This document shows, piece after piece, positions 1-63,776 of a stretch of DNA of 64,000 nt. How positions within the stretch are numbered: position 1 is the first letter of the stretch; each line of letters opens with the position of its first letter. The DNA lies in the IMG/VR virus record IMGVR_UViG_3300047510_001118, positions 62,001 to 126,000 of that record; one strand, 5' to 3'. A model generated the notes under the pieces. The model was not told where the DNA came from, did not search any database, and was given only the letters and a program-made list of their open reading frames with translations. A program made the translations under genes and the position numbers.

Positions 1-1227
1 CATTATTTGATAGCGTCCTGCAGCACTGGAACCTGCTCTACGAGCATGTGCTAACTGATAAGATGCTAACTCTTCCATAGTCATATTTAAAATAGCCGGA
101 TCACGTTTGCCACCAAACATTATATCATATTGGCCGCCACTTTCTGGACCAGCAACAAAATTAAGCACTTGTCCAACTTTGCCTTTTGTAACAGCATCAA
201 GTTGTAAAGGTTTGCTGACATCTACCTTGCTTTGAGCTGGTCTAACTTCAGCCTGCGAACTCTTTTTCAATGTAGCCAATAGTTCTGGTTTGGCTTTAAG
301 CATGGCATTCATCTTATCAACTGTTGCTTTGTCAGCATCACCAGTGGCCGGCAATCCATTCTTTTCTTGGAATGTTCTAATAGCAGCCGTTGTTTCTTTT
401 CCTTGTAAGCCGTCAACACCAAATTTTGGTAATGGAACACCTAATGCTATCAATGCCTTCTGTACGTCAGCAGTTTGTGGGCTTCTTAAACTTGGTGGAA
501 CTTCAACTACAAAGGATTGTTTATTAGGATCTTGTTCTTTATCACCTAACCCAACTTTGTTTAATACTTTATTACCAAATCTATCAAGAGAAGATTTTGG
601 TTCTTTTGGTTCTTCTTTTGAACTTGATCCTGGTTCATTACTTCCAAAAGCAGTTGGTTTGGCTGAACTAACTACCTGTGATGCTACAACCTTATATGTA
701 GACATACCAGCATGTACACCATCAGTTAGTGGTTTGCCGTTGATGTCAATAATCGGTATACCGCCAAGAGCACTTCTAATTGCAGCACGTACCTCTTCTT
801 GAAACTCACCACCATAGAACTTGGCTTCTTTACTACCTCGTCCTGGACCGTTAGGGAATAATAAGAAAAGTACTTTTGAAGGTTGCTGTGCGTTAATTCT
901 ATCTACCACACTGGAAACATCAGATGCGATTGATTGAGCAGTGCGGGATGGTTTTCCCGGAACCATGGCGTTAGCAGTATCGTTGGCTCCTAACGCTACT
1001 AATACCACAGAACCTTTGGGTATTTTTGGAATATTGGCCAACATCTGTTGTGTTCTTGGTGCTGGACCTTTGCTGGCCGCTGAAGGCACTCCTAAATTAA
1101 GCCATTTTACGCCTTTCATTACACCGCCCATTACGCCTACTGCATGTGCGTGGCTGTCACCGATAGCAACATAGACTGGTTCGGGTTCTGATTCAAAAAT
1201 TTGGGTTATAAATTCACGTGCTCTCAT
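1..1227 (-). CDS. SGNH/GDSL hydrolase + PG-binding + lysozyme-like (lambda/T4-type muramidase or transglycosylase) fusion; 3' end runs off the window
   Basis: Not in the ORF track; translated by hand from ATG at 1227 and open to base 1. Contains SGNH blocks (AIGDSHA, LGANDT, TDGVHA), a PG_binding_1-like segment (VQKALIALG..GVDGLQGKETTAAIRTFQEKNGLPATG) and a lysozyme-like start (ESGGQYDIMFGG...SSAAGRYQIM). TAAATA late motif upstream at 1235-1240. Confidence 0.8.
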   Translation of the reverse strand, partial: MRAREFITQIFESEPEPVYVAIGDSHAHAVGVMGGVMKGVKWLNLGVPSAASKGPAPRTQQMLANIPKIPKGSVVLVALGANDTANAMVPGKPSRTAQSIASDVSSVVDRINAQQPSKVLFLLFPNGPGRGSKEAKFYGGEFQEEVRAAIRSALGGIPIIDINGKPLTDGVHAGMSTYKVVASQVVSSAKPTAFGSNEPGSSSKEEPKEPKSSLDRFGNKVLNKVGLGDKEQDPNKQSFVVEVPPSLRSPQTADVQKALIALGVPLPKFGVDGLQGKETTAAIRTFQEKNGLPATGDADKATVDKMNAMLKAKPELLATLKKSSQAEVRPAQSKVDVSKPLQLDAVTKGKVGQVLNFVAGPESGGQYDIMFGGKRDPAILNMTMEELASYQLAHARRAGSSAAGRYQIM

Positions 1228-1272
1228 AGTACAGTATTTAGTATTTTTTATCTTTGACTAATAAATATTTTT

Positions 1273-3723: not shown

Positions 3724-4158
3724 TTAATTACACCAACTTTGTTTTGCGTCACCATAGTATTCTCTAGCAAAGCCGTTGGCAATGAGTTGACTACGTAGAC
3801 TTTGTCCGTTTAGAATGATGTCGCCTAGAACACGCCCACCAAACTTATCCCATCCATAAAGGACCACTTGTCGTTTTTGACTGGCTTGAACGAGATTTTT
3901 AGTAAAAACTGATGCGGCTTCTCCTCGTTGTTTTTCACTATCGCATTGTCCACGAAAGCCTTTTTCGGGTGTGTCAACTCCGTAGATACGTACAGCAAGT
4001 TCTGGTTTAAGAGGCTGTGGGAGAAAGGGAGCGGCAATTACAATAGTATCGCCATCGCTTACTCTTAGTATTTGTGCGTCATACATAACGCCCTGCGGTG
4101 TTTTTTGTGCCAGTGCTAGTGTAGGAATTGCCAACAATAATAGTAGTAGTTTTTTCAT
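3724..4158 (-). CDS. thermonuclease (SNase-like) with signal peptide
   Basis: RVSDGDT, VRIYGVDTPE, DKFGGRVLG motifs; hydrophobic N-terminus. Confidence 0.9.
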   Translation of the reverse strand: MKKLLLLLLAIPTLALAQKTPQGVMYDAQILRVSDGDTIVIAAPFLPQPLKPELAVRIYGVDTPEKGFRGQCDSEKQRGEAASVFTKNLVQASQKRQVVLYGWDKFGGRVLGDIILNGQSLRSQLIANGFAREYYGDAKQSWCN

Positions 4159-4944: not shown

Positions 4945-5370
4945 TCATTCTGTTCTGTCTTTGTCATCTATCGCTCCTCCAGTGACCCATGCTGTACAAC
5001 TACGTGTGCCAGCGCATTTAAAATGTAAAAAGTTACAGTAACCTAAATCTGCCTTGTGTATTGTAGCCATAGCATCTGCTGATTTCTCGTCACCCTTAAT
5101 ACCATCTTCAATACAAGACCACATCTTATCTGAAACATCAAAGGCCGCACAGTTACCGCAACGCATTGTCTTAGCAGTCTTTTCGTCTATGTCCCAACGC
5201 TTGGCCGCATCCTTCCAGTAGTTACCTGACTCTTCAGGATTCGCAGGTCCATAATGATATTCGTCTATGGCTTTCTGACGATTTTTTAAGTTGACATCTA
5301 TGTCGTAGGTAGCAATGGGACAGCCTTTATTGGCTGCTTCTACTATGTTGATATATTTTCTGTAGATCAT
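4945..5370 (-). CDS. conserved phage Cys-containing hypothetical protein
   Basis: 141 aa, CGNC and C..H..C..TRSC motifs; N-terminus INIVEAA. Confidence 0.75.
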   Translation of the reverse strand: MIYRKYINIVEAANKGCPIATYDIDVNLKNRQKAIDEYHYGPANPEESGNYWKDAAKRWDIDEKTAKTMRCGNCAAFDVSDKMWSCIEDGIKGDEKSADAMATIHKADLGYCNFLHFKCAGTRSCTAWVTGGAIDDKDRTE

Positions 5371-6680
5371 AATTCATCCCATCCTATAGCCCAGCATTGT
5401 TGAGTTGAGTTAGTAGTTGTAGTTACAGCAATAAGAAACTCGTAATTTACACCTGTGAATGTGTTACGTTCTAACTGAAACTTGAAAGGAAATCCAGCCA
5501 GTGATGGTGCTATACTAGCCTGATTAGTGGCTATAACATACCCTTCATCAATCAGCCTACCGTTAGTATAACTAGTGGGTGTTAGGTTGTATTCTACTGA
5601 AGATGTTGTGCCGGTGTCTTGCCATTCACCACCAGTGGTGATAGCCTGCTGTATAATAAAGTATTGATAATTGGCTCCAGTTAATGGAGCAAAACTAAAA
5701 TTAGTAGGCACTACTATGGCGTTGTTTCTTCCTGCTTTGAGTCTTATACTGATCATAGGAACAGGAGTATTGACCTGTGCTTGGTTAGTAGTTCTCGGTG
5801 CGGTTATGTTATGGCCAATAACTCTAGGGCGACCTATGAGTTCATAGCCGCCTTCTGATATCACAGATTGGCAGATAAATTTTAGCGTGTCGCTGACTCC
5901 GGTGGCGCTGGTATTTTCTATCTCATAGCGAATAGGCAGTCGTGCTGTGCCCATATAGGTTGTGGTTATGCCAGCGTTGTTAGCATGATCCCATCTATGG
6001 CAGGGTATAAACTGTCCGTTGATTACAAATCCCATAGTCACTGATCCTACACCTAACCATTCTAAGTTGATATAAAGTATCTGCGATGTGGCTAGATTTA
6101 ATACGATCTTATCTGCGTCTGTGCCATCTAGTTTACTAATATTCCAATCTGCTTTGGCAATGCGAGTTGTATCTAAACTACCACTAGAACTGCTTCTTCG
6201 CACAAAGTAAACATCTGTTCCATCCTGTTCTAGATAGAAACCGTTGTCATTGTCAAAATATCCCACACGCTGTCTCAGTCCCACTCGGGCCTGTGCCATA
6301 CAGAATGTTTCTAATATCAACAAACTCTTGCCTGGTTGGTAGGCAAATGCCCTTGTACTTTCTCTGTAGACCTTACTGCCAGCGGTGCCATCTACGGTCA
6401 TTGCTAGGGCACTAGAATTTGTATTGTGTAAGGTACTGCCTCCGCTGGCAGTGAAGTTCACAAATCCATCTAAGTTGTCGTAGTACTTGCTGGAGTTGTC
6501 AAAAAGTGTAAAAGGCTCACTAGTACGAAATCGTCCAAACGCATCTACCGCCGTAGGACCTAATGTAGTTCTAATTATAGGGCGACCAAGTACATCGTAC
6601 TGCATGGCCATAGTTAAGTCATTGGTGTTTGGTTCGTAACTATGAAAGTAGTTGGTTGAGTTAGGATTTAAATTAGCCAT
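5367..6680 (-). CDS. virion structural protein (T4-like/cyanophage type)
   Basis: 437 aa, beta-rich, DAFGRFRTSEPFTLFD motif typical of such structural proteins. Confidence 0.6.
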   Translation of the reverse strand: MANLNPNSTNYFHSYEPNTNDLTMAMQYDVLGRPIIRTTLGPTAVDAFGRFRTSEPFTLFDNSSKYYDNLDGFVNFTASGGSTLHNTNSSALAMTVDGTAGSKVYRESTRAFAYQPGKSLLILETFCMAQARVGLRQRVGYFDNDNGFYLEQDGTDVYFVRRSSSSGSLDTTRIAKADWNISKLDGTDADKIVLNLATSQILYINLEWLGVGSVTMGFVINGQFIPCHRWDHANNAGITTTYMGTARLPIRYEIENTSATGVSDTLKFICQSVISEGGYELIGRPRVIGHNITAPRTTNQAQVNTPVPMISIRLKAGRNNAIVVPTNFSFAPLTGANYQYFIIQQAITTGGEWQDTGTTSSVEYNLTPTSYTNGRLIDEGYVIATNQASIAPSLAGFPFKFQLERNTFTGVNYEFLIAVTTTTNSTQQCWAIGWDEL

Positions 6681-7175: not shown

Positions 7176-7784
7176 ATGAAACCTTTGTTGATGATACATG
7201 AAGTTCGAGAATGGATGTTTGATCTTCCATTAAATGACTACATCCTAACCTTTGATGACGGACTTTACAGCCAGTATTATTACAACGATCGTTTCAAACA
7301 ATTAACTACACAGAGAATATACTACATCAGTTCGGGTATTGTTAGCAGTGGTAAACAAAACTTAGATTTTCCAACCTGTGTAGATGCTCACATAAAAGCT
7401 CGCCAGGGCAACACAGAAGACTACATGACTGTTGCCCAGATCAAAGAACTGATGAAAGACCCAAACGTAATCATTGGCGCACACAGTCACAGTCATATTC
7501 GCTTGGATAACTTTACTAGTCTAGCAGAAAAGGTTAGATATATCAATGAAGATACAGAGCAGATGATACAGTGGTTTGAAACAAACTTAGGATTTAAACC
7601 CACACACTTCTGTTTCCCTTACAACGAAGATCCACACGGACTGTACAAAGGACTAGTTAAAAAATTTGGGATTACGAACTGCGTTGGATACGGTCGAACA
7701 CCAATCGAAACGCTTCGGCATAATGTAAGCCAACTTGATAGCCTCGATATTTTGCCAGCGTGGTCATTGCCTCGATACTCCTAG
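7176..7784 (+). CDS. polysaccharide deacetylase (NodB/CE4 family)
   Basis: LTFDDG, HSHSH, FCFPY motifs; ATG 7176 preferred over the 7170 TTG. Confidence 0.85.
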   Translation: MKPLLMIHEVREWMFDLPLNDYILTFDDGLYSQYYYNDRFKQLTTQRIYYISSGIVSSGKQNLDFPTCVDAHIKARQGNTEDYMTVAQIKELMKDPNVIIGAHSHSHIRLDNFTSLAEKVRYINEDTEQMIQWFETNLGFKPTHFCFPYNEDPHGLYKGLVKKFGITNCVGYGRTPIETLRHNVSQLDSLDILPAWSLPRYS

Positions 7785-51956: not shown

Positions 51957-52034
51957 GGGCCTCTAGCTCATGTTGGTTAGAGCAGTGGACTCATAATCCA
52001 TTGGTGCGGAGTTCGACTCTCCGGGGGCCCACCA
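51957..52034 (+). tRNA. tRNA CAT anticodon, probably Ile2 (lysidine, reads AUA)
   Basis: cloverleaf with GTGGA-CTCATAA-TCCAT arm, GTTCG T-loop, encoded CCA; resembles ileX rather than Met tRNAs. Confidence 0.9.
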
Positions 52035-52038
52035 GATC

Positions 52039-52123
52039 GCGACTGTGGTGAAATCGGTAGACACAAGAGACTTAAAATCTCTCGCTGCAAGGCGTGCCAG
52101 TTCGATTCTGGCCAGTCGCACCA
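52039..52123 (+). tRNA. tRNA-Leu(TAA)
   Basis: AGAGA-CTTAAAA-TCTCT arm, long variable arm, CCA. Confidence 0.93.
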
Positions 52124-52129
52124 AACAAT

Positions 52130-52206
52130 CTGCCCGTAGCTCAACCGGATAGAGCAACGGCCTTCTAAGCCGTAGGTTGGGGGTTCGATTCCCTCCGGGC
52201 AGGCCA
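52130..52206 (+). tRNA. tRNA-Arg(TCT)
   Basis: ACGGC-CTTCTAA-GCCGT arm, CTGCCCG/CGGGCAG acceptor stem, CCA. Confidence 0.93.
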
Positions 52207-57492: not shown

Positions 57493-58557
57493 TTAGTTTC
57501 TTATTCGGATTTTGTCAATGGGATTGGGCGGTCTGCCTACGGGATCTGTGCCAATACTTTCATAGACATTGGAACCACTGGTGCCAGTGCCAGTCCAAGA
57601 AATTGTGTCTATGTTGCCCTGAGTGGTCACGCCGTTGATTAGGCCTGTGACTGTGACAGTGATGTCGTTGAGTCCATTTACACCACCTAGGAAACTGCCC
57701 AATATGGTCAATGTATCACCAACTAGATAGTTCTGCCCACGCAGTACAGGGGTTACTGCTGAGTAGACGCCCGCAGTTTTGGTCACTGCGAATCGTGCGC
57801 CTGAACCAGCACCTGAACCTCTATTTCTAAAGATACGGAAACGAACAAATCTCCAATCGCCTGTGAGCGTTTTGGTAGTGTCTACACCAGTGTCCCAAAC
57901 ACCAATATTTGTCCAAGTAACGCTGTTGGCTGTGCTCTTATCACGTGTGGCTTCAACAATAATGCCGCCTTCGTATGTGCCTTCGTAATCTACAGTTATG
58001 GTTCTAGTGGCGCCTATATCATCATTGATGCTGTTGCCAAACCGTCCAACTTCACTGACATATTCTTTGCGATCAAATTCATAGTTAAACACTGTAAGTT
58101 CTTCGATCACAGTGCCTGCGGCATTGAGTTCATTGTAGCCATTTAGTACTTCTACAGATCCAAACAATTCAAACTGTCCGTCAATATACAGTGGAGTAGT
58201 ATCGTCATCACCGTCAACTAATCTAACAGCCATCAACAGTTGTTGTGGATCTACGTCATCTAATGTTGCTGTGGGTATAACCATGGATAACTGTCCAGGT
58301 TGACTGACAATAGGTGTAGCAGTGACTTCAAACAGTTTTTTGTGTTCACTGTCAAAAAATAACACATCAGCAGTGTAGCCTACAACATTCTGCTTACGCT
58401 GTTCTGAATTGCGTACATCTATCTGTATGGCATTGTCCGTGCCTTTGTATAATTTTAATTTGCGCTGATACACTTTTCTAAACTCCGTGTTGAATCCTAC
58501 TCGATCTGTAGTAACTGTAATCCTATTTGGTACTAAATAAAACTGAATTTTTTGCAT
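57493..58557 (-). CDS. probable virion structural protein
   Basis: beta-rich, Gly/Thr-rich C-terminal segment; TAAATA at 58588-58593. Confidence 0.55.
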   Translation of the reverse strand: MQKIQFYLVPNRITVTTDRVGFNTEFRKVYQRKLKLYKGTDNAIQIDVRNSEQRKQNVVGYTADVLFFDSEHKKLFEVTATPIVSQPGQLSMVIPTATLDDVDPQQLLMAVRLVDGDDDTTPLYIDGQFELFGSVEVLNGYNELNAAGTVIEELTVFNYEFDRKEYVSEVGRFGNSINDDIGATRTITVDYEGTYEGGIIVEATRDKSTANSVTWTNIGVWDTGVDTTKTLTGDWRFVRFRIFRNRGSGAGSGARFAVTKTAGVYSAVTPVLRGQNYLVGDTLTILGSFLGGVNGLNDITVTVTGLINGVTTQGNIDTISWTGTGTSGSNVYESIGTDPVGRPPNPIDKIRIRN

Positions 58558-61520: not shown

Positions 61521-61795
61521 TATTTGTCCTTGATTGTCTGATATATTAGTATAGCACGGTCTAGGGCTTTTTGTAAAGTAGGATTGGTACGTGCTTCTCT
61601 CCGAATTTCACCCCACATCTTATCTTCCATTACGTGATCGTGTAACGGTCGTCCATCAACGGTTCTTGGATCATTTTTATCGTATTCCCAACCGATTGGT
61701 TTTCTTGTATCGGGGGCCGCACCAATCTCTCGAGCATAGACAGTGTTGCCGTCACGCTCGTATATGTAAGTTGCCCCAGGTGTTAGCGATCCCAT
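61520..61795 (-). CDS. hypothetical protein
   Basis: start placed at MGSLTPGATYIYER. Confidence 0.65.
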   Translation of the reverse strand: MGSLTPGATYIYERDGNTVYAREIGAAPDTRKPIGWEYDKNDPRTVDGRPLHDHVMEDKMWGEIRREARTNPTLQKALDRAILIYQTIKDK

Positions 61796-61796
61796 A

Positions 61797-62303
61797 TTAT
61801 AATAACTTGTAATGGTTGATAATTTCGCTCTGTCTACTAATGTCTTTAGTAAAAAACGCACACATAGGTTTTGGCCCATCAGTTAACGGTACGCTGAGCA
61901 ATTGATTATTTTTCATTTTAGGAAAGTACCATTTAACATCACTGTAAATGTTTACTATTTCAATCTGAGCATACTCGTGTTTAAATGCGCTCAATGGATT
62001 AAAAATAAATGCTTCAAATCCTCTGTCGTTTAAACTAGTCAAAGGTAGAACTTCTAACTCGTTTCCGCACTCACTGTCCCCTACTGCTATGCTCCAATCT
62101 ATAGGCATAGTTACTTCGTTGCCTCCAATGTTTAATACCATTGCTGGACTATTAAAACTTTCTAAAAAGATTAATGGAATAAAAAAGAAATCGGGATTAT
62201 TTGGATCGTTGTTATCTAGAACACTAAATCTAATATCTTCCTCAACTTCATCTGGCATTTTTGATAAATCAAATGTCTTGTTGTCTATTGTTAAAATTAA
62301 CAT
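61797..62303 (-). CDS. conserved hypothetical protein
   Basis: 168-aa coupled ORF. Confidence 0.7.
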   Translation of the reverse strand: MLILTIDNKTFDLSKMPDEVEEDIRFSVLDNNDPNNPDFFFIPLIFLESFNSPAMVLNIGGNEVTMPIDWSIAVGDSECGNELEVLPLTSLNDRGFEAFIFNPLSAFKHEYAQIEIVNIYSDVKWYFPKMKNNQLLSVPLTDGPKPMCAFFTKDISRQSEIINHYKLL

Positions 62304-62315
62304 CTTATCTCCGAG

Positions 62316-63776
62316 TTACAGCCAATTTATCTTTTCAAGAGTAAAAGGATACTTGGCTTCTTTGTAAAATTTTTTTCGCTCTGTTAAGTGTCGTTTCGCG
62401 TATTTGCACGTTGACGTGATGTCCCAGATTTGTACAAAGTCTTTATCTTCTGCCTTTCTAATCCCTCGCCCAATGCTTTGTATAACGCGGACAAAGCTCT
62501 TTCCGGGTTCAAGAAGAACCAGATTAAAAATCCTTGGAATATTAAGACCCACAGCGGCCACACCATAAGTCGCCACAATAACCTTGCTATCAGATTCTTT
62601 AACTTCATCATAATGTTCTTTTCTCTCTGTTAATTTAACTTCGCCGCTGATAAACACTGAATCTGGAATCGCTTCAACGATTTGTTTGCCTGCGTCTAGC
62701 CTATCTACTAATATTAATGTATTGCCTGCATCTTTTATTGAATTACATAATTTTGCGATATATCCTATACGTTCACTGTCTGTGACAAGATATTTTAATT
62801 CTTCTTGATAGGTTCTAAATTCTTTTACATCTAGCATCTGTACAATGTTAACATGACATTGTGCCAACACACCTCGCTCTTGTAGTTGATGTGCCGCTAT
62901 TCTATTAACCACTGGGCCAATTGTGGCTAGGATACTATGAAAATTAATTTCTTCTTTGGGTATAGTTCCTGTAAGTCCCCAACGTATAGGAGCATGAGCC
63001 ATGTTTTGACTCAGTAGTTTCTTTAACACATCTGCCTTGGCCTGGTGAACTTCGTCTATGATTACACAGACTACACCTTCTAAGAATTCCGCCAATGACA
63101 GTGTTTCAGAATCGTAACTTTTCTTATCTAGTATGTTTAAACTTTGCCAAGTACAGATAGTATGTGTACGATTTAATTCTTTTCTATCTCCAAAATATAC
63201 CCCAACATCTAACCCAACATTGCGATAGTCTTCTTCTGTTTGAACAACTAGGCTCTTATTTGGAACAATAACTAATGTTCGACCGTAAGGTTCACACAGT
63301 GCTGATAGAGTGGCTGTGATAATTGTTTTACCTGCGCCAGTGGCTAACTCTTGTAACCCTTGCGGGTTATCCATAAAGTTATTAATCGCATCTAGTTGAT
63401 AGTCACGTAATACAATAGGTTGCCCAGCCATAGGGTGACCTTTTGGCCATGTCTTACCTTGTTCAGCCCAATATTGATCTGTGATTTTAGCAAAATCAAA
63501 TTTGTGTGTTTGGCGTAGATCTTCAATTTCTTCAACGCTGACGTCGCACTCTTCTAATATAGGAAGAATAGTTTCTAAGTGATTTAGATAACCATTGCCT
63601 CCAAGACCAAAGAACGTAGTAGTACCATCCCATCGTCCTAATTTGTATTGTGGCATGTGACGAGCATATGGAAGCTCAAATTTTAATGCGTTAGAAATTT
63701 TCCTCCGTATTTCAACTGGAAGACCTTCTATTTTAATATTGACTTCGTCTCGAATAATTATTTTACAACTGTACAA
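62316..63776 (-). CDS. UvsW-like SF2 DNA helicase
   Basis: LRDYQ, ATGAGKT, IIDEVH, GLTGT, QSIGRGIR. Confidence 0.92.
   Translation of the reverse strand: MYSCKIIIRDEVNIKIEGLPVEIRRKISNALKFELPYARHMPQYKLGRWDGTTTFFGLGGNGYLNHLETILPILEECDVSVEEIEDLRQTHKFDFAKITDQYWAEQGKTWPKGHPMAGQPIVLRDYQLDAINNFMDNPQGLQELATGAGKTIITATLSALCEPYGRTLVIVPNKSLVVQTEEDYRNVGLDVGVYFGDRKELNRTHTICTWQSLNILDKKSYDSETLSLAEFLEGVVCVIIDEVHQAKADVLKKLLSQNMAHAPIRWGLTGTIPKEEINFHSILATIGPVVNRIAAHQLQERGVLAQCHVNIVQMLDVKEFRTYQEELKYLVTDSERIGYIAKLCNSIKDAGNTLILVDRLDAGKQIVEAIPDSVFISGEVKLTERKEHYDEVKESDSKVIVATYGVAAVGLNIPRIFNLVLLEPGKSFVRVIQSIGRGIRKAEDKDFVQIWDITSTCKYAKRHLTERKKFYKEAKYPFTLEKINWL

What the first reader, a model, noticed from the sequence alone, without database searches (positions are those of the whole stretch)
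1..1227. SGNH esterase fused to a PG-binding domain and a lysozyme-like domain
Seen: this ORF, missed by the track, joins an intact SGNH module (GDSH, GAND, DGVH), a PG_binding_1-like module and a lysozyme-like domain start. Established: MurNAc O-acetylation blocks lysozymes and lytic transglycosylases, and Ape1-type SGNH enzymes remove it. Inference: a self-priming wall-degrading enzyme that de-O-acetylates and then cleaves, probably packaged in the virion given its late promoter and IxE-type N-terminus.
Basis: partly seen in the sequence, partly recalled or inferred. Interest (0 to 1): 0.7.

Follow-up and report, generated by a model that had tools for sequence, protein, structure and literature searches.

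The report
Tagged esterase–lytic transglycosylase of a jumbo phage
A giant freshwater phage related to T4 encodes a three-part cell-wall enzyme (acetyl-esterase, wall-binding module, lambda-type wall cutter) whose first 12 residues resemble the T4 signal that loads proteins into the phage head, so it is probably carried in the virion to breach the wall at infection.

Summary
A minus-strand ORF starts at window 1227 and runs off the left edge. The full gene (G000:C1:61692-63227) encodes 511 aa: a 12-residue N-terminal tag, a compact SGNH esterase with GDSH, GAND and DGVH motifs, a disordered linker, a PG_binding_1 domain, and a lambda-lysozyme-type (GH104-like) lytic transglycosylase with an invariant Glu362.

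The host genome is a T4-superfamily jumbo phage from freshwater, about 380 kb, encoding a gp23-like capsid protein and a gp21-like prohead protease. At least 169 uncultured relatives keep the tag, SGNH and PG-binding chassis but swap the C-terminal module among five glycan-cleaving folds.

The tag (MRAREFITQIFE) resembles the T4 capsid targeting sequence MKTYQEFIAE and ends in the gp21-type [LI]xE motif. It is retained in relatives that lack the SGNH domain. It also heads unrelated proteins, including an M23 peptidase. Five ORFs in this genome start with it, against 0.02 expected.

Esterase substrate, packaging and cleavage remain inferred, and membership of the Ape1 family is not supported. 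This is also the only recognisable wall-cleaving enzyme in the 278-kb record, so an endolysin role is not excluded.

The parts
1235..1240 (-). T4-late-like promoter element TAAATA (context ACTAAATAC). It ends 7 nt before the ATG, which implies a leaderless or near-leaderless late transcript.
   Evidence: 63 of the 156 TAAATA copies in the genome lie within 60 nt upstream of an ORF on the sense strand, against 5.3 expected. There are two spacing classes, 4-8 nt and 16-30 nt. No transcript data could be obtained.
1192..1227 (-). Start codon and 12-residue N-terminal tag MRAREFITQIFE, resembling the T4 capsid targeting sequence. It ends in IFE, an [LI]xE prohead-protease motif.
   Evidence: pLDDT is below 50 for residues 1-12. 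The tag is conserved in 164 of 169 relatives, including members without the SGNH domain. It is shared with unrelated proteins. T4 CTS = MKTYQEFIAE (PMC8442874).
643..1191 (-). SGNH esterase domain, residues 13-195. Ser25 (1153-1155), Asn82 (982-984), Asp169 (721-723), His172 (712-714).
   Evidence: The catalytic residues are invariant or at least 90% conserved. The block II Gly (at least 90% of the family) is Ser49 in this protein.
508..642 (-). Low-complexity disordered linker, residues 196-240, rich in Ser, Lys, Glu and Pro.
   Evidence: pLDDT is below 50 for residues 196-235. Length and sequence vary in the alignment.
310..483 (-). PG_binding_1 domain, residues 249-306.
   Evidence: Pfam E 3e-13. 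Own-genome search places it at C1:62310-62483. The profile matches the PG-binding domain of phiKZ gp144 (3bkh; 9xps chain S).
205..309 (-). Second linker, residues 307-341. This is where relatives switch to other C-terminal domains.
   Evidence: The alignment of P0001 with P0012 ends at residue 329. pLDDT is below 50 for residues 332-338.
1..204 (-). N-terminal part (residues 342-409) of the lambda-lysozyme-type (GH104-like) lytic transglycosylase domain. The catalytic Glu362 codon is at 142-144. The domain continues to residue 511, outside the window (to G000:C1:61692).
   Evidence: E362, S363, G365, Y367 and the GRYQ motif are invariant.

Best explanation
The gene encodes a late-expressed, 511-aa peptidoglycan-attacking enzyme of an uncultured freshwater T4-superfamily jumbo phage.

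Shown:
- The architecture is an N-terminal 12-residue tag, an SGNH serine esterase, a PG_binding_1 domain and a lambda-R-type lytic transglycosylase.
- Catalytic residues are conserved in both enzymatic domains.
- The tag is a portable module. It resembles the T4 capsid targeting sequence and ends in the [LI]xE motif cut by gp21-type prohead proteases, and this phage encodes such a protease.

Inferred mechanism:
1. The tag docks the protein into the scaffolding core of the prohead.
2. The protease removes it after Glu12.
3. The mature enzyme stays in the head and is expelled at infection.
4. The PG-binding domain anchors it to the sacculus.
5. The SGNH domain removes 6-O-acetyl groups from MurNAc. 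These groups block lytic transglycosylases, which need the free C6 hydroxyl.
6. The C-terminal domain cleaves the glycan strand.

An additional or alternative role in lysis from within cannot be excluded.
For: Architecture and residues.

T4-type head machinery in the same genome:
- Gp23 capsid protein, E 6e-99.
- Peptidase_S77 (gp21), E 6e-27.
- The scaffold homologue carries 20 [LI]xE sites in 363 aa, i.e. 5.5 per 100 aa against 0.99 for the proteome.
- The capsid protein N-terminus has such sites at residues 6, 18 and 41.

The tag:
- It is present in 164 of 169 relatives and in 60 of 72 representatives at the 50% identity level.
- It is kept in about 300-aa relatives that have no SGNH domain (P0064, P0084, P0098).
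- It is kept at 28% overall identity.
- In a related 364-kb phage, three adjacent genes carry it: an 86-aa protein, an M23 peptidase with a PG-binding domain, and the SGNH lysin.
- It also heads DUF6321 proteins and others.
- In this genome, 5 ORF starts match the tag pattern against 0.02 expected, and 0 of 1432 internal Met positions match.
- T4 CTS MKTYQEFIAE is cleaved once and is sufficient for packaging (PMC8442874). T-even internal proteins share only the CTS (PMC3012670). T4 Alt is cut at ITE-6 (PMC5694885).
- The mature part of the family is depleted in [LI]xE (observed/expected 0.60), whereas [LI]xD is at 1.39.

Esterase–glycosidase coupling:
- C-terminal modules among 169 relatives are 89 GH104-like, 31 Phage_lysozyme2, 30 Hydrolase_2, 10 SLT and 7 GH19.
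- A relative whose SGNH domain is 92-93% identical carries GH19 instead.
- All partner domains of this SGNH subfamily are wall-binding or wall-cleaving.
- Structural neighbours are acetyl-specific SGNH enzymes, including PatB, with weak sequence links to PatB/DUF459.

Other: a late-type promoter element. No holin, spanin or membrane protein lies next to the gene.
Against: - There is no biochemical, proteomic or transcript evidence. No RNA run was listed.
- Co-folding the protease with the tag peptide gave no answer.
- The SGNH fold matches many esterase families equally well (Z 13-15), so the substrate is not pinned down.
- The block II Gly is Ser in this protein.
- A few subfamily members are fused to peptidases (M23, M15), so the pairing with glycan cleavers is not absolute.
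- Whether the unknown host O-acetylates its peptidoglycan is not known.
- No other muralytic domain was found in the 278-kb record, which is 75% of the genome. The phage may therefore need this enzyme as its endolysin.
- Head-internal proteins of T4 go to the cytoplasm, and delivery to the periplasm from a contractile-tailed phage is not established.
- Cultured relatives (PA5oct, CBB, Vibrio 2.275.O, Phosso) lack the tag.
- The homologues are related to each other, so the conservation and depletion statistics are not independent samples.
Confidence: 0.5

Rival explanations
1. It is the phage's ordinary endolysin. It accumulates in the cytoplasm late in infection and reaches the wall through a holin encoded elsewhere. 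The conserved N-terminus has some other role (folding, stability, translation of a leaderless mRNA) and does not load the protein into heads. The esterase still helps to degrade an O-acetylated wall, but from within.
For: - It is the only recognisable muralytic enzyme in the 278-kb record: no PF00959, PF01464, PF01510, PF01551 or PF18013, no second GH104-like domain, and no match to four relatives' other C-terminal domains (GH19, Hydrolase_2, Phage_lysozyme2, SLT).
- A PG_binding_1 domain plus a transglycosylase is the layout of jumbo-phage endolysins such as phiKZ gp144.
- It has a late-type promoter.
- It has no signal peptide or membrane segment.
- PHROG matches are mostly labelled endolysin.
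Against: - No holin, spanin or membrane protein lies within 6 kb, apart from one 78-aa protein with a single hydrophobic stretch 2.5 kb away.
- The tag is conserved at the peptide level with synonymous codon differences. It also occurs on a translationally coupled gene that has no leaderless promoter.
- The tag ends in the protease motif, is shared with unrelated proteins, and resembles the T4 CTS.
- The mature protein is depleted in [LI]xE sites.
- 25% of the genome is missing, so another endolysin may exist.
Confidence: 0.3
2. The SGNH domain does not act on peptidoglycan. Instead it deacylates another envelope component, such as O-acetylated LPS or capsule sugars, or a lipid or lipoprotein ester of the outer membrane. 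It would be an accessory activity comparable in logic to mycobacteriophage LysB.
For: - The fold matches sialate, xylan and other carbohydrate O-acetylesterases, PAF acetylhydrolase and TesA-type lysophospholipases about equally well.
- Phage tail fibres with SGNH deacetylases for surface polysaccharides are documented (PMC11058221; PMC10684548).
- The host is diderm, judging from the phage-borne CsgG and CsgF.
Against: - Across 72 representatives, this SGNH subfamily is fused only to peptidoglycan-binding or peptidoglycan-cleaving domains. It is never fused to tail-fibre, receptor-binding or lipid-related modules.
- Its only sequence-level links to characterised proteins are to PatB/DUF459, which works on the MurNAc 6-OH.
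- It is tethered to a PG-binding domain.
Confidence: 0.15
3. The SGNH domain is catalytically dead or works as a PatB-like O-acetyltransferase, modifying rather than unmasking the wall.
For: - Block II Gly is replaced by Ser49 in this protein.
- PatB is among the best structural matches and has the highest identity, 20%.
Against: - Ser25, His26, Asn82, Asp83, Asp169 and His172 are invariant or nearly so across the family. That argues for a maintained active site.
- O-acetylating MurNAc would block the transglycosylase fused to it.
- No acetyl donor system (a PatA-like protein) is linked to it.
Confidence: 0.05

Closest known systems
T4 internal proteins (IPI, IPII, IPIII) and Alt, with their capsid targeting sequence
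   Same: - A roughly 10-residue N-terminal tag, M-[KR]-x-x-(x)-E-F-I-x-E, that ends in the [LI]xE motif cut by the gp21 protease. Compare T4 MKTYQEFIAE with MRAREFITQIFE here, MRAKEFILIE at C1:34554-36107 and MRAKEFITE in L059.
- The same tag heads otherwise unrelated proteins of one phage.
- Gp21- and gp23-type head genes are present.
   Different: - The cargo here is a set of wall-degrading enzymes (esterase-transglycosylase, M23 peptidase), not small basic anti-restriction proteins.
- The phage is a distant jumbo relative of T4 (Rak2/GAP32/PA5oct-like capsid protein, 65-71% identity).
- Packaging and cleavage have not been shown.
Bacteriophage lambda R lysozyme (GH104 lytic transglycosylase; PDB 1am7, 3d3d)
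   Same: - The C-terminal domain has the same fold (TM 0.63-0.65).
- It shows profile homology (E 3e-6), an invariant Glu in the first helix, and the GRYQ and QD motifs.
   Different: - Only about 20% identity.
- Here it is the last module of a three-domain protein, and it is interchangeable with four other glycan-cleaving folds.
- The best structural match is actually the lysozyme-like domain of the cyanophage A-1(L) baseplate protein 8kea_A.
phiKZ gp144 and EL gp188 type jumbo-phage endolysins
   Same: An N-terminal PG_binding_1 domain followed by a lytic transglycosylase, in phages of Gram-negative hosts.
   Different: - gp144 has a GH23/SLT-type catalytic domain and sits in a lysis cassette with a holin and spanins (PMC12894885).
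- The present protein has an extra esterase domain and an N-terminal tag, and no lysis cassette around it.
Ape1 O-acetylpeptidoglycan esterase and PatB/OatA O-acetyltransferases (SGNH enzymes acting on MurNAc 6-O-acetyl)
   Same: - SGNH fold with a Ser-His-Asp triad and the block III Asn.
- Peptidoglycan context.
- PatB structures align at Z about 14 with 20% identity, with weak sequence links to DUF459/Cj0610c.
   Different: - No detectable sequence relation to Ape1, and no inserted carbohydrate-binding domain.
- This is a minimal 180-residue SGNH domain forming an isolated subfamily: only 76 clusters at E <= 0.001 among 1.84 billion representatives.
- It is encoded by phages and fused to the glycan cleaver.
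T7 gp16 and other virion-internal lysins
   Same: A peptidoglycan-degrading activity stored inside the capsid and ejected at infection (PMC6116005).
   Different: - gp16 is a large core and channel protein of a podovirus and has no cleavable targeting tag.
- The present protein would be a soluble enzyme loaded by a T4-type tag in a myovirus.
Mycobacteriophage LysB
   Same: The same logic: an accessory esterase removes an ester-linked barrier so that lysis can proceed (PMC6116005).
   Different: LysB has a cutinase-like fold, acts on a mycolyl-arabinogalactan substrate, and is a separate protein in the lysis cassette.

Membership tests
SGNH/GDSL hydrolase superfamily | Block I GDS with the nucleophile Ser | tested here: met
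   GDSH at residues 23-26. G23, D24, S25 and H26 are invariant in 28 homologues. In 72 representatives G23 and D24 stay invariant and S25 and H26 are at least 90% conserved.
SGNH/GDSL hydrolase superfamily | Block II Gly of the oxyanion hole | tested here: not met
   The column is Gly in at least 90% of the subfamily. This protein and its closest relatives have Ser49, in the context NLGVPSAAS. The contribution comes from the backbone NH, so activity may persist.
SGNH/GDSL hydrolase superfamily | Block III GxND and block V DxxH | tested here: met
   G80, N82, D83, D169 and H172 are invariant or at least 90% conserved.
SGNH/GDSL hydrolase superfamily | Fold and profile match | tested here: met
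   The Pfam match is below the cut-off (27.5 vs 32.9 bits). The fold matches at Foldseek E about 1e-5 and VIA Z 13-15.2 over residues 12-191. Relatives pass the Pfam cut-off.
Ape1-type O-acetylpeptidoglycan esterase | Sequence homology to Ape1 and its inserted carbohydrate-binding domain | tested here: not met
   No Ape1 chain appears in the sequence searches or among the best 50 matches shown by the PDB fold searches. The model is a single compact domain of about 180 residues.
Ape1-type O-acetylpeptidoglycan esterase | Hydrolysis of 6-O-acetyl-MurNAc in peptidoglycan | not testable with these tools
   The only evidence is indirect: fusion partners are all wall-targeting, with weak links to PatB/DUF459.
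GH104 (lambda R-type lytic transglycosylase) | Lambda-lysozyme fold with a catalytic Glu in the first helix | tested here: met
   1am7 and 3d3d match at TM 0.63-0.65. The profile matches at E 3e-6. E362 is invariant within PESxG.
GH104 (lambda R-type lytic transglycosylase) | Formation of 1,6-anhydro-MurNAc products | not testable with these tools
   Requires muropeptide analysis.
PG_binding_1 domain proteins | Pfam PF01471 above the gathering score | tested here: met
   50.2 bits against a cut-off of 23, residues 249-306.
T4-type CTS-tagged head-internal proteins | An N-terminal tag of about 10 residues resembling MKTYQEFIAE and ending in [LI]xE | tested here: met
   MRAREFITQIFE. The strict pattern M[RK]x x[ED][FIVL]...[LI]xE is found in about 108 of 120 relatives, and a relaxed form in 164 of 169. 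T4 sequence from PMC8442874.
T4-type CTS-tagged head-internal proteins | The phage encodes a gp21-type prohead protease and a scaffold rich in its sites | tested here: met
   Peptidase_S77 at E 6e-27. The scaffold has 5.5 [LI]xE sites per 100 aa against 0.99 for the proteome.
T4-type CTS-tagged head-internal proteins | The same tag on otherwise unrelated proteins of the phage | tested here: met
   Five tagged ORFs in this genome. In relatives: an M23 peptidase, an 86-aa protein, DUF6321 proteins and others.
T4-type CTS-tagged head-internal proteins | Physical presence in heads and removal of the tag | not testable with these tools
   No proteomics is available. The co-fold of protease and tag gave no answer.
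Canonical holin-dependent endolysin | Location in a lysis cassette with a holin and spanins | tested here: inconclusive
   No adjacent membrane protein or lipoprotein was found. The T4 holin model found nothing, but it also found nothing in the controls. 25% of the genome is missing.

The most novel reading that the evidence does not exclude
A clade of uncultured freshwater jumbo phages has kept a T4-type capsid targeting sequence and uses it to load a kit of wall-remodelling enzymes into the head: an O-acetyl esterase fused to interchangeable glycan cleavers, an M23 peptidase, and other proteins. These are trimmed by the prohead protease and expelled at infection. That would be a head-borne wall-breaching toolkit in a contractile-tailed phage, and it would include the first phage enzyme dedicated to removing peptidoglycan O-acetylation.
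Probability: 0.35. Interest if true: 0.75.

Novelty: new variant of a known kind. Interest (0 to 1): 0.6.

Why it matters
O-acetylation of MurNAc is a widespread bacterial defence against lysozymes, and it is an absolute block to lytic transglycosylases. A phage enzyme that carries its own de-O-acetylase would be a natural answer to that defence. It would also be a ready-made design for engineered lysins.

The interchangeable C-terminal modules show this chassis being re-equipped in nature. There are five folds, and one relative has a 92-93% identical esterase domain with a different cutter.

The conserved tag suggests that the T4 capsid targeting system is much older and more widely used than the T-even internal proteins. 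It also suggests the system can carry enzymes aimed at the cell wall.

I found no description of such a fusion. The literature searches returned none. The esterase part has no match in PHROGs or in 50,697 cultured phage genomes.

Tried and rejected
- **Nucleotide and protein searches against 50,697 phage records.** No close cultured relative was found, and only the C-terminal domain matched (Rhizobium, Synechococcus and Stappia phages).
- **PHROG and Pfam scans of the immediate neighbours.** They were uninformative, apart from a secreted SNase and a virion structural protein.
- **Co-folding the prohead protease with residues 1-25.** The tool returned no answer, so this counts neither for nor against.
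- **RNA sequencing runs.** None was listed. The DNA runs only show a freshwater or lake origin.
- **Tag search in cultured relatives** (PA5oct, CBB, Vibrio 2.275.O, Phosso). Hits were at chance level, with only one doubtful case in Phosso. The tag is therefore not a general trait of the Rak2/GAP32-like supergroup.
- **Strict 'only glycan cleavers' reading.** I had to soften it, because 3-4 of 72 representatives carry peptidase domains.
- **Idea that the conserved N-terminus reflects nucleotide-level constraints of leaderless mRNAs.** I considered and rejected this as the main cause. Codons differ synonymously, and a translationally coupled gene carries the same tag.
- **Idea that tagged proteins are exported by the phage-encoded curli (CsgG/CsgF) system.** I considered and set it aside, because the tagged proteins lack Sec signals.
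- **Fold searches for a specific SGNH neighbour.** They gave a flat ranking (Z 13-15), so no substrate assignment follows from structure.
Full report
**Observation**

The finding describes a real gene, on the minus strand. Translating window 1-1227 in reverse gives 409 codons without a stop, beginning at the ATG at 1225-1227. The window is G000:C1:62001-126000 of a 278,126-bp IMG/VR virus record, estimated 75% complete. The ORF continues 308 nt to the left of the window. The full gene is G000:C1:61692-63227 and encodes 511 aa.

Mechanical ORF lists omit ORFs that run off an end, which likely explains why the track missed it. An identical protein (P0001) lies on a 381,653-bp contig.

I checked their codons against the raw sequence.

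**Anatomy**

Pfam finds PG_binding_1 at residues 249-306 (E 3e-13). It finds a sub-threshold GDSL match at residues 39-163 (27.5 bits against a cut-off of 32.9).

An AlphaFold model built on 28 homologues has mean pLDDT 84.9. It shows:
- a disordered N-terminus, residues 1-12;
- a compact alpha/beta domain, residues 13-190;
- a disordered Ser/Lys/Glu/Pro-rich linker, residues 196-235;
- the three-helix PG-binding module;
- a short linker, residues 332-338;
- a helical C-terminal domain.

In the alignment, G23, D24, S25, H26, G80, N82, D83, D169 and H172 are invariant. In 72 cluster representatives of the esterase subfamily, G23, D24 and G80 stay invariant and S25, H26, N82, D83, D169 and H172 are conserved in at least 90%. 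One departure: the block II glycine, Gly in at least 90% of the subfamily, is Ser49 in this protein and its nearest relatives.

**The esterase domain**

Foldseek and VIA-align place residues 12-191 in the SGNH fold (E about 1e-5; Z up to 15.2). The ranking is flat across many families: aryl esterase, sialate O-acetylesterase, the carbohydrate acetylesterase Est24, acetyl-xylan esterases, PAF acetylhydrolase, TesA, and the peptidoglycan O-acetyltransferase PatB of Neisseria and Campylobacter (Z about 14, 20% identity).

The only sequence-level links to characterised SGNH proteins are weak and point to PatB/DUF459:
- profile against PDB: 8gr2 (Cj0610c), E 0.054;
- two subfamily members match Pfam DUF459 at E 7e-4.

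Ape1 does not appear in the sequence searches or among the best matches shown by the fold searches, and there is no inserted sugar-binding domain. Working like an O-acetyl-peptidoglycan esterase remains plausible. Membership of the Ape1 family is not supported.

The subfamily is small and isolated. An exhaustive HMMER search of 1.84 billion cluster representatives found only 76 at E <= 0.001. The esterase part has no match in PHROGs or in 50,697 cultured phage genomes.

**The C-terminal domain**

A separate model of residues 338-511 has pLDDT 93. Its best matches are the lysozyme-like domain of the cyanophage A-1(L) baseplate protein (8kea_A) and lambda lysozyme (1am7, 3d3d; TM 0.63-0.65), followed by bacterial lytic transglycosylases. 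The family profile hits lambda lysozyme at E 3e-6.

Glu362 (codon at window 142-144), within the motif PES-G-Y, is invariant, as are the GRYQ and QD motifs. Lambda R is a lytic transglycosylase (established knowledge). Such enzymes need the free C6 hydroxyl of MurNAc and are blocked by 6-O-acetylation.

**Family and module exchange**

Two word-indexed searches returned 169 distinct relatives, nearly all from metagenomes, some on contigs of 100-380 kb. All share the N-terminal chassis of tag, esterase and PG-binding domain.

Clustering their last 165 residues gives five C-terminal classes:

| C-terminal class | Number of relatives |
|---|---|
| GH104-like | 89 |
| Phage_lysozyme2 | 31 |
| Hydrolase_2 (SleB-like) | 30 |
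| SLT | 10 |
| GH19 | 7 |

The relative with the most similar esterase domain (P0012, 92-93% identity) carries GH19. Its alignment with the present protein stops at residue 329, in the second linker.

Among 72 representatives at the 50% identity level, the partner domains are as follows:

| Partner domain | Representatives |
|---|---|
| PG_binding_1 | 36 |
| Phage_lysozyme2 | 20 |
| GH104-like | 17 |
| Hydrolase_2 | 9 |
| SLT | 4 |
| GH19 | 2 |
| PG_binding_3 | 2 |
| Peptidases (M23, M15_3, M15_2, M48) | 1 each |

The esterase is thus found essentially only in wall-targeting proteins and mostly next to a glycan-strand cleaver. That is what the self-priming idea predicts, although the pairing is not absolute.

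**The N-terminal tag**

The genome is of the T4 superfamily:
- a Gp23 capsid protein (E 6e-99, C1:205176-206138);
- a gp21-type prohead protease (Peptidase_S77, E 6e-27, C1:207541-207984);
- a portal protein and a scaffold protein in T4 order.

T4 loads its internal proteins through a roughly 10-residue capsid targeting sequence, MKTYQEFIAE. The prohead protease cuts it off once, and it suffices to package foreign proteins (PMC8442874). T-even internal proteins are diverse and share only this tag (PMC3012670). T4 Alt is cut at ITE-6 and LTE-619 (PMC5694885).

The present protein starts MRAREFITQIFE. Five lines of evidence mark this as a portable, protease-linked tag.
- **Conservation.** About 108 of the first 120 relatives start M-R-[FA]-x-[ED]-F followed within a few residues by [LI]-x-E, and 164 of 169 fit a slightly relaxed form. 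So do 60 of 72 representatives. Members at 28% identity still start MRF[FV]EFKE.
- **Independence from the esterase domain.** Three relatives of about 300 aa lack the esterase domain yet keep the tag directly before the PG-binding domain (P0064, P0084, P0098).
- **Occurrence on unrelated proteins.**
  - In a related 364-kb phage, three consecutive genes start MRISEIITE (86 aa), MRFNEFKLFE (M23 peptidase with a PG-binding domain) and MRFKEFKLFE (the esterase-lysin).
  - Other loci have tagged DUF6321 proteins (MRAKEFITE) and small proteins.
  - In this genome the pattern matches five ORF starts: C1:34554-36107, 57962-58234, 61692-63227, 130183-130875 and 273966-274886. That compares with 0.02 expected from composition and 0 of 1432 internal methionines.
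- **Protease motif use elsewhere in the head.** The scaffold homologue has 20 [LI]xE sites in 363 aa (5.5 per 100 aa, against 0.99 for the proteome). The capsid protein has three in its first 41 residues.
- **Depletion in the mature protein.** The present protein has only two such sites: the tag and one inside the folded C-terminal domain. Across the first 120 relatives the mature parts are depleted (observed/expected 0.60), while [LI]xD is not (1.39). The sequences are related, so this last statistic is only suggestive.

Codons of the tag differ synonymously between genes, so the constraint is on the peptide.

**Promoter**

TAAATA, the core of the T4 late promoter TATAAATA (established knowledge), occurs 156 times in the genome. 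Of these, 63 lie within 60 nt upstream of an ORF on the sense strand (5.3 expected). There are two spacing classes.

The present gene has ACTAAATAC with the hexamer at window 1235-1240, ending 7 nt before the ATG. The tagged ORF at C1:34554 has the same layout. No transcript data could be obtained, so 'late' is an inference.

**Context and host**

The capsid protein is 65-71% identical to those of the Rak2/GAP32/CBB/PA5oct-like jumbo phages, Vibrio phage 2.275.O and Sinorhizobium phage Phosso. These cultured phages lack both the esterase-lysin and the tag.

Runs holding the sequence are freshwater and lake metagenomes. The phage carries CsgG, CsgF and a curlin-repeat gene, which implies a diderm host.

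No other muralytic domain was found in the 278-kb record:
- no PF00959, PF01464, PF01510, PF01551 or PF18013;
- no second GH104-like domain;
- no match to four relatives' other C-terminal domains (GH19, Hydrolase_2, Phage_lysozyme2, SLT).

No membrane protein or lipoprotein lies next to the gene.

**Mechanism and rivals**

The best-supported reading has these steps:
1. The protein is made late.
2. It is docked into the prohead core by its tag.
3. It is trimmed after Glu12.
4. It is carried in the head and released at infection.
5. It is anchored to the sacculus by the PG-binding domain.
6. The esterase strips 6-O-acetyl groups so that the transglycosylase can cut.

Shown: the architecture, the conserved catalytic residues, the modular exchange, the portability and specificity of the tag, and the presence of the T4-type protease and its motif usage.

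Inferred: the esterase substrate, packaging, cleavage, and the site of action.

The main rival is an ordinary endolysin role, possibly in addition to the entry role. It is favoured by the absence of any other recognisable lysin. It is weakened by the tag and by the lack of a lysis cassette. A non-peptidoglycan substrate for the esterase, or a transferase or dead domain, is less likely given the fusion partners and the conserved triad.

**Comparison and novelty**

Each module belongs to a known kind: the SGNH fold, PG_binding_1, a GH104-like transglycosylase, and a T4-type targeting tag. What I did not find described is:
- the combination of esterase and glycan cleaver in one phage protein;
- its repeated re-equipment with five cutter folds;
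- a CTS-like tag on wall-degrading enzymes.

The literature searches found none of these. I therefore rate it a new variant of a known kind, of moderate to high interest. The interest would rise if packaging and de-O-acetylation were demonstrated.

Noticed in passing
G000:C1:31119-34490 (outside the window, about 28 kb to its left): Phage-borne curli (type VIII secretion) genes, most with N-terminal signal-peptide-like leaders and all on the minus strand: a FecR-like protein (E 3e-11), a curlin-repeat protein (weak match), CsgG (E 2e-53) and CsgF (E 3e-16). They lie directly downstream of the tagged 517-aa ORF at C1:34554-36107. This implies a diderm host and is unusual for a phage.
   Followed up: partly
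window 3724-4158 (-): A staphylococcal-nuclease homologue with a signal peptide (MKKLLLLLLAIPTLALAQ). It is preceded by a GATAAATA element and is syntenic with the esterase-lysin in a related 364-kb phage (L007:13900-14334).
   Followed up: partly
window 7176-7784 (+): A NodB-type polysaccharide deacetylase (PF01522, E 5e-7) with TAAATA ending 6 nt before its ATG. This is a second deacetylating enzyme, 6 kb from the esterase-lysin.
   Followed up: partly
whole genome; e.g. window 1235-1240, C1:58957-58966, C1:59704-59714: About 20 genes have the late-type TAAATA element ending only 4-8 nt before the ATG and no Shine-Dalgarno sequence. This suggests a class of leaderless late mRNAs. A second class has a spacing of 16-30 nt with a ribosome-binding site.
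   Followed up: partly
G000:C1:56408-59703 (just left of the window): A run of same-strand genes with looser tag-like N-termini: MRVTEFNKKI, MNINEFTRGIE, MKITDLLSE, MLIKEFTVE and MKEFIIRTLVDITE. One of them matches a virion structural protein PHROG. The arrangement is reminiscent of the T4 internal-protein locus.
   Followed up: partly
G000:C1:271360-273768, 276095-277276, 134619-135671: A second shared N-terminal signature, MD[MI][KR]x[IL]L..[LIV]D, on three proteins of 802, 393 and 350 aa. The 802-aa protein contains a PG_binding_1 domain but no recognisable catalytic domain.
   Followed up: no
G000:C1:130878-132947 and 130183-130875: A 689-aa protein with a PG_binding_1 domain and a virion-structural PHROG match. 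It lies next to a tagged 230-aa protein (MRIQEIIKE) that has a hydrophobic segment.
   Followed up: no
window 51957-52206 (+): A cluster of three tRNA genes: Met (cat), Leu (taa) and Arg (tct).
   Followed up: no
L007:14712-15437 region of the related 364-kb phage: A Lipase_3 family gene and a lipoprotein-like gene follow the SNase in the relative. An M23 peptidase precedes the esterase-lysin. Together they form a small cluster of hydrolytic enzymes.
   Followed up: no
window 5367-6680 (-): A 437-aa protein that strongly matches PHROG 1645, virion structural protein (E 1e-102). It is conserved in synteny in relatives.
   Followed up: no
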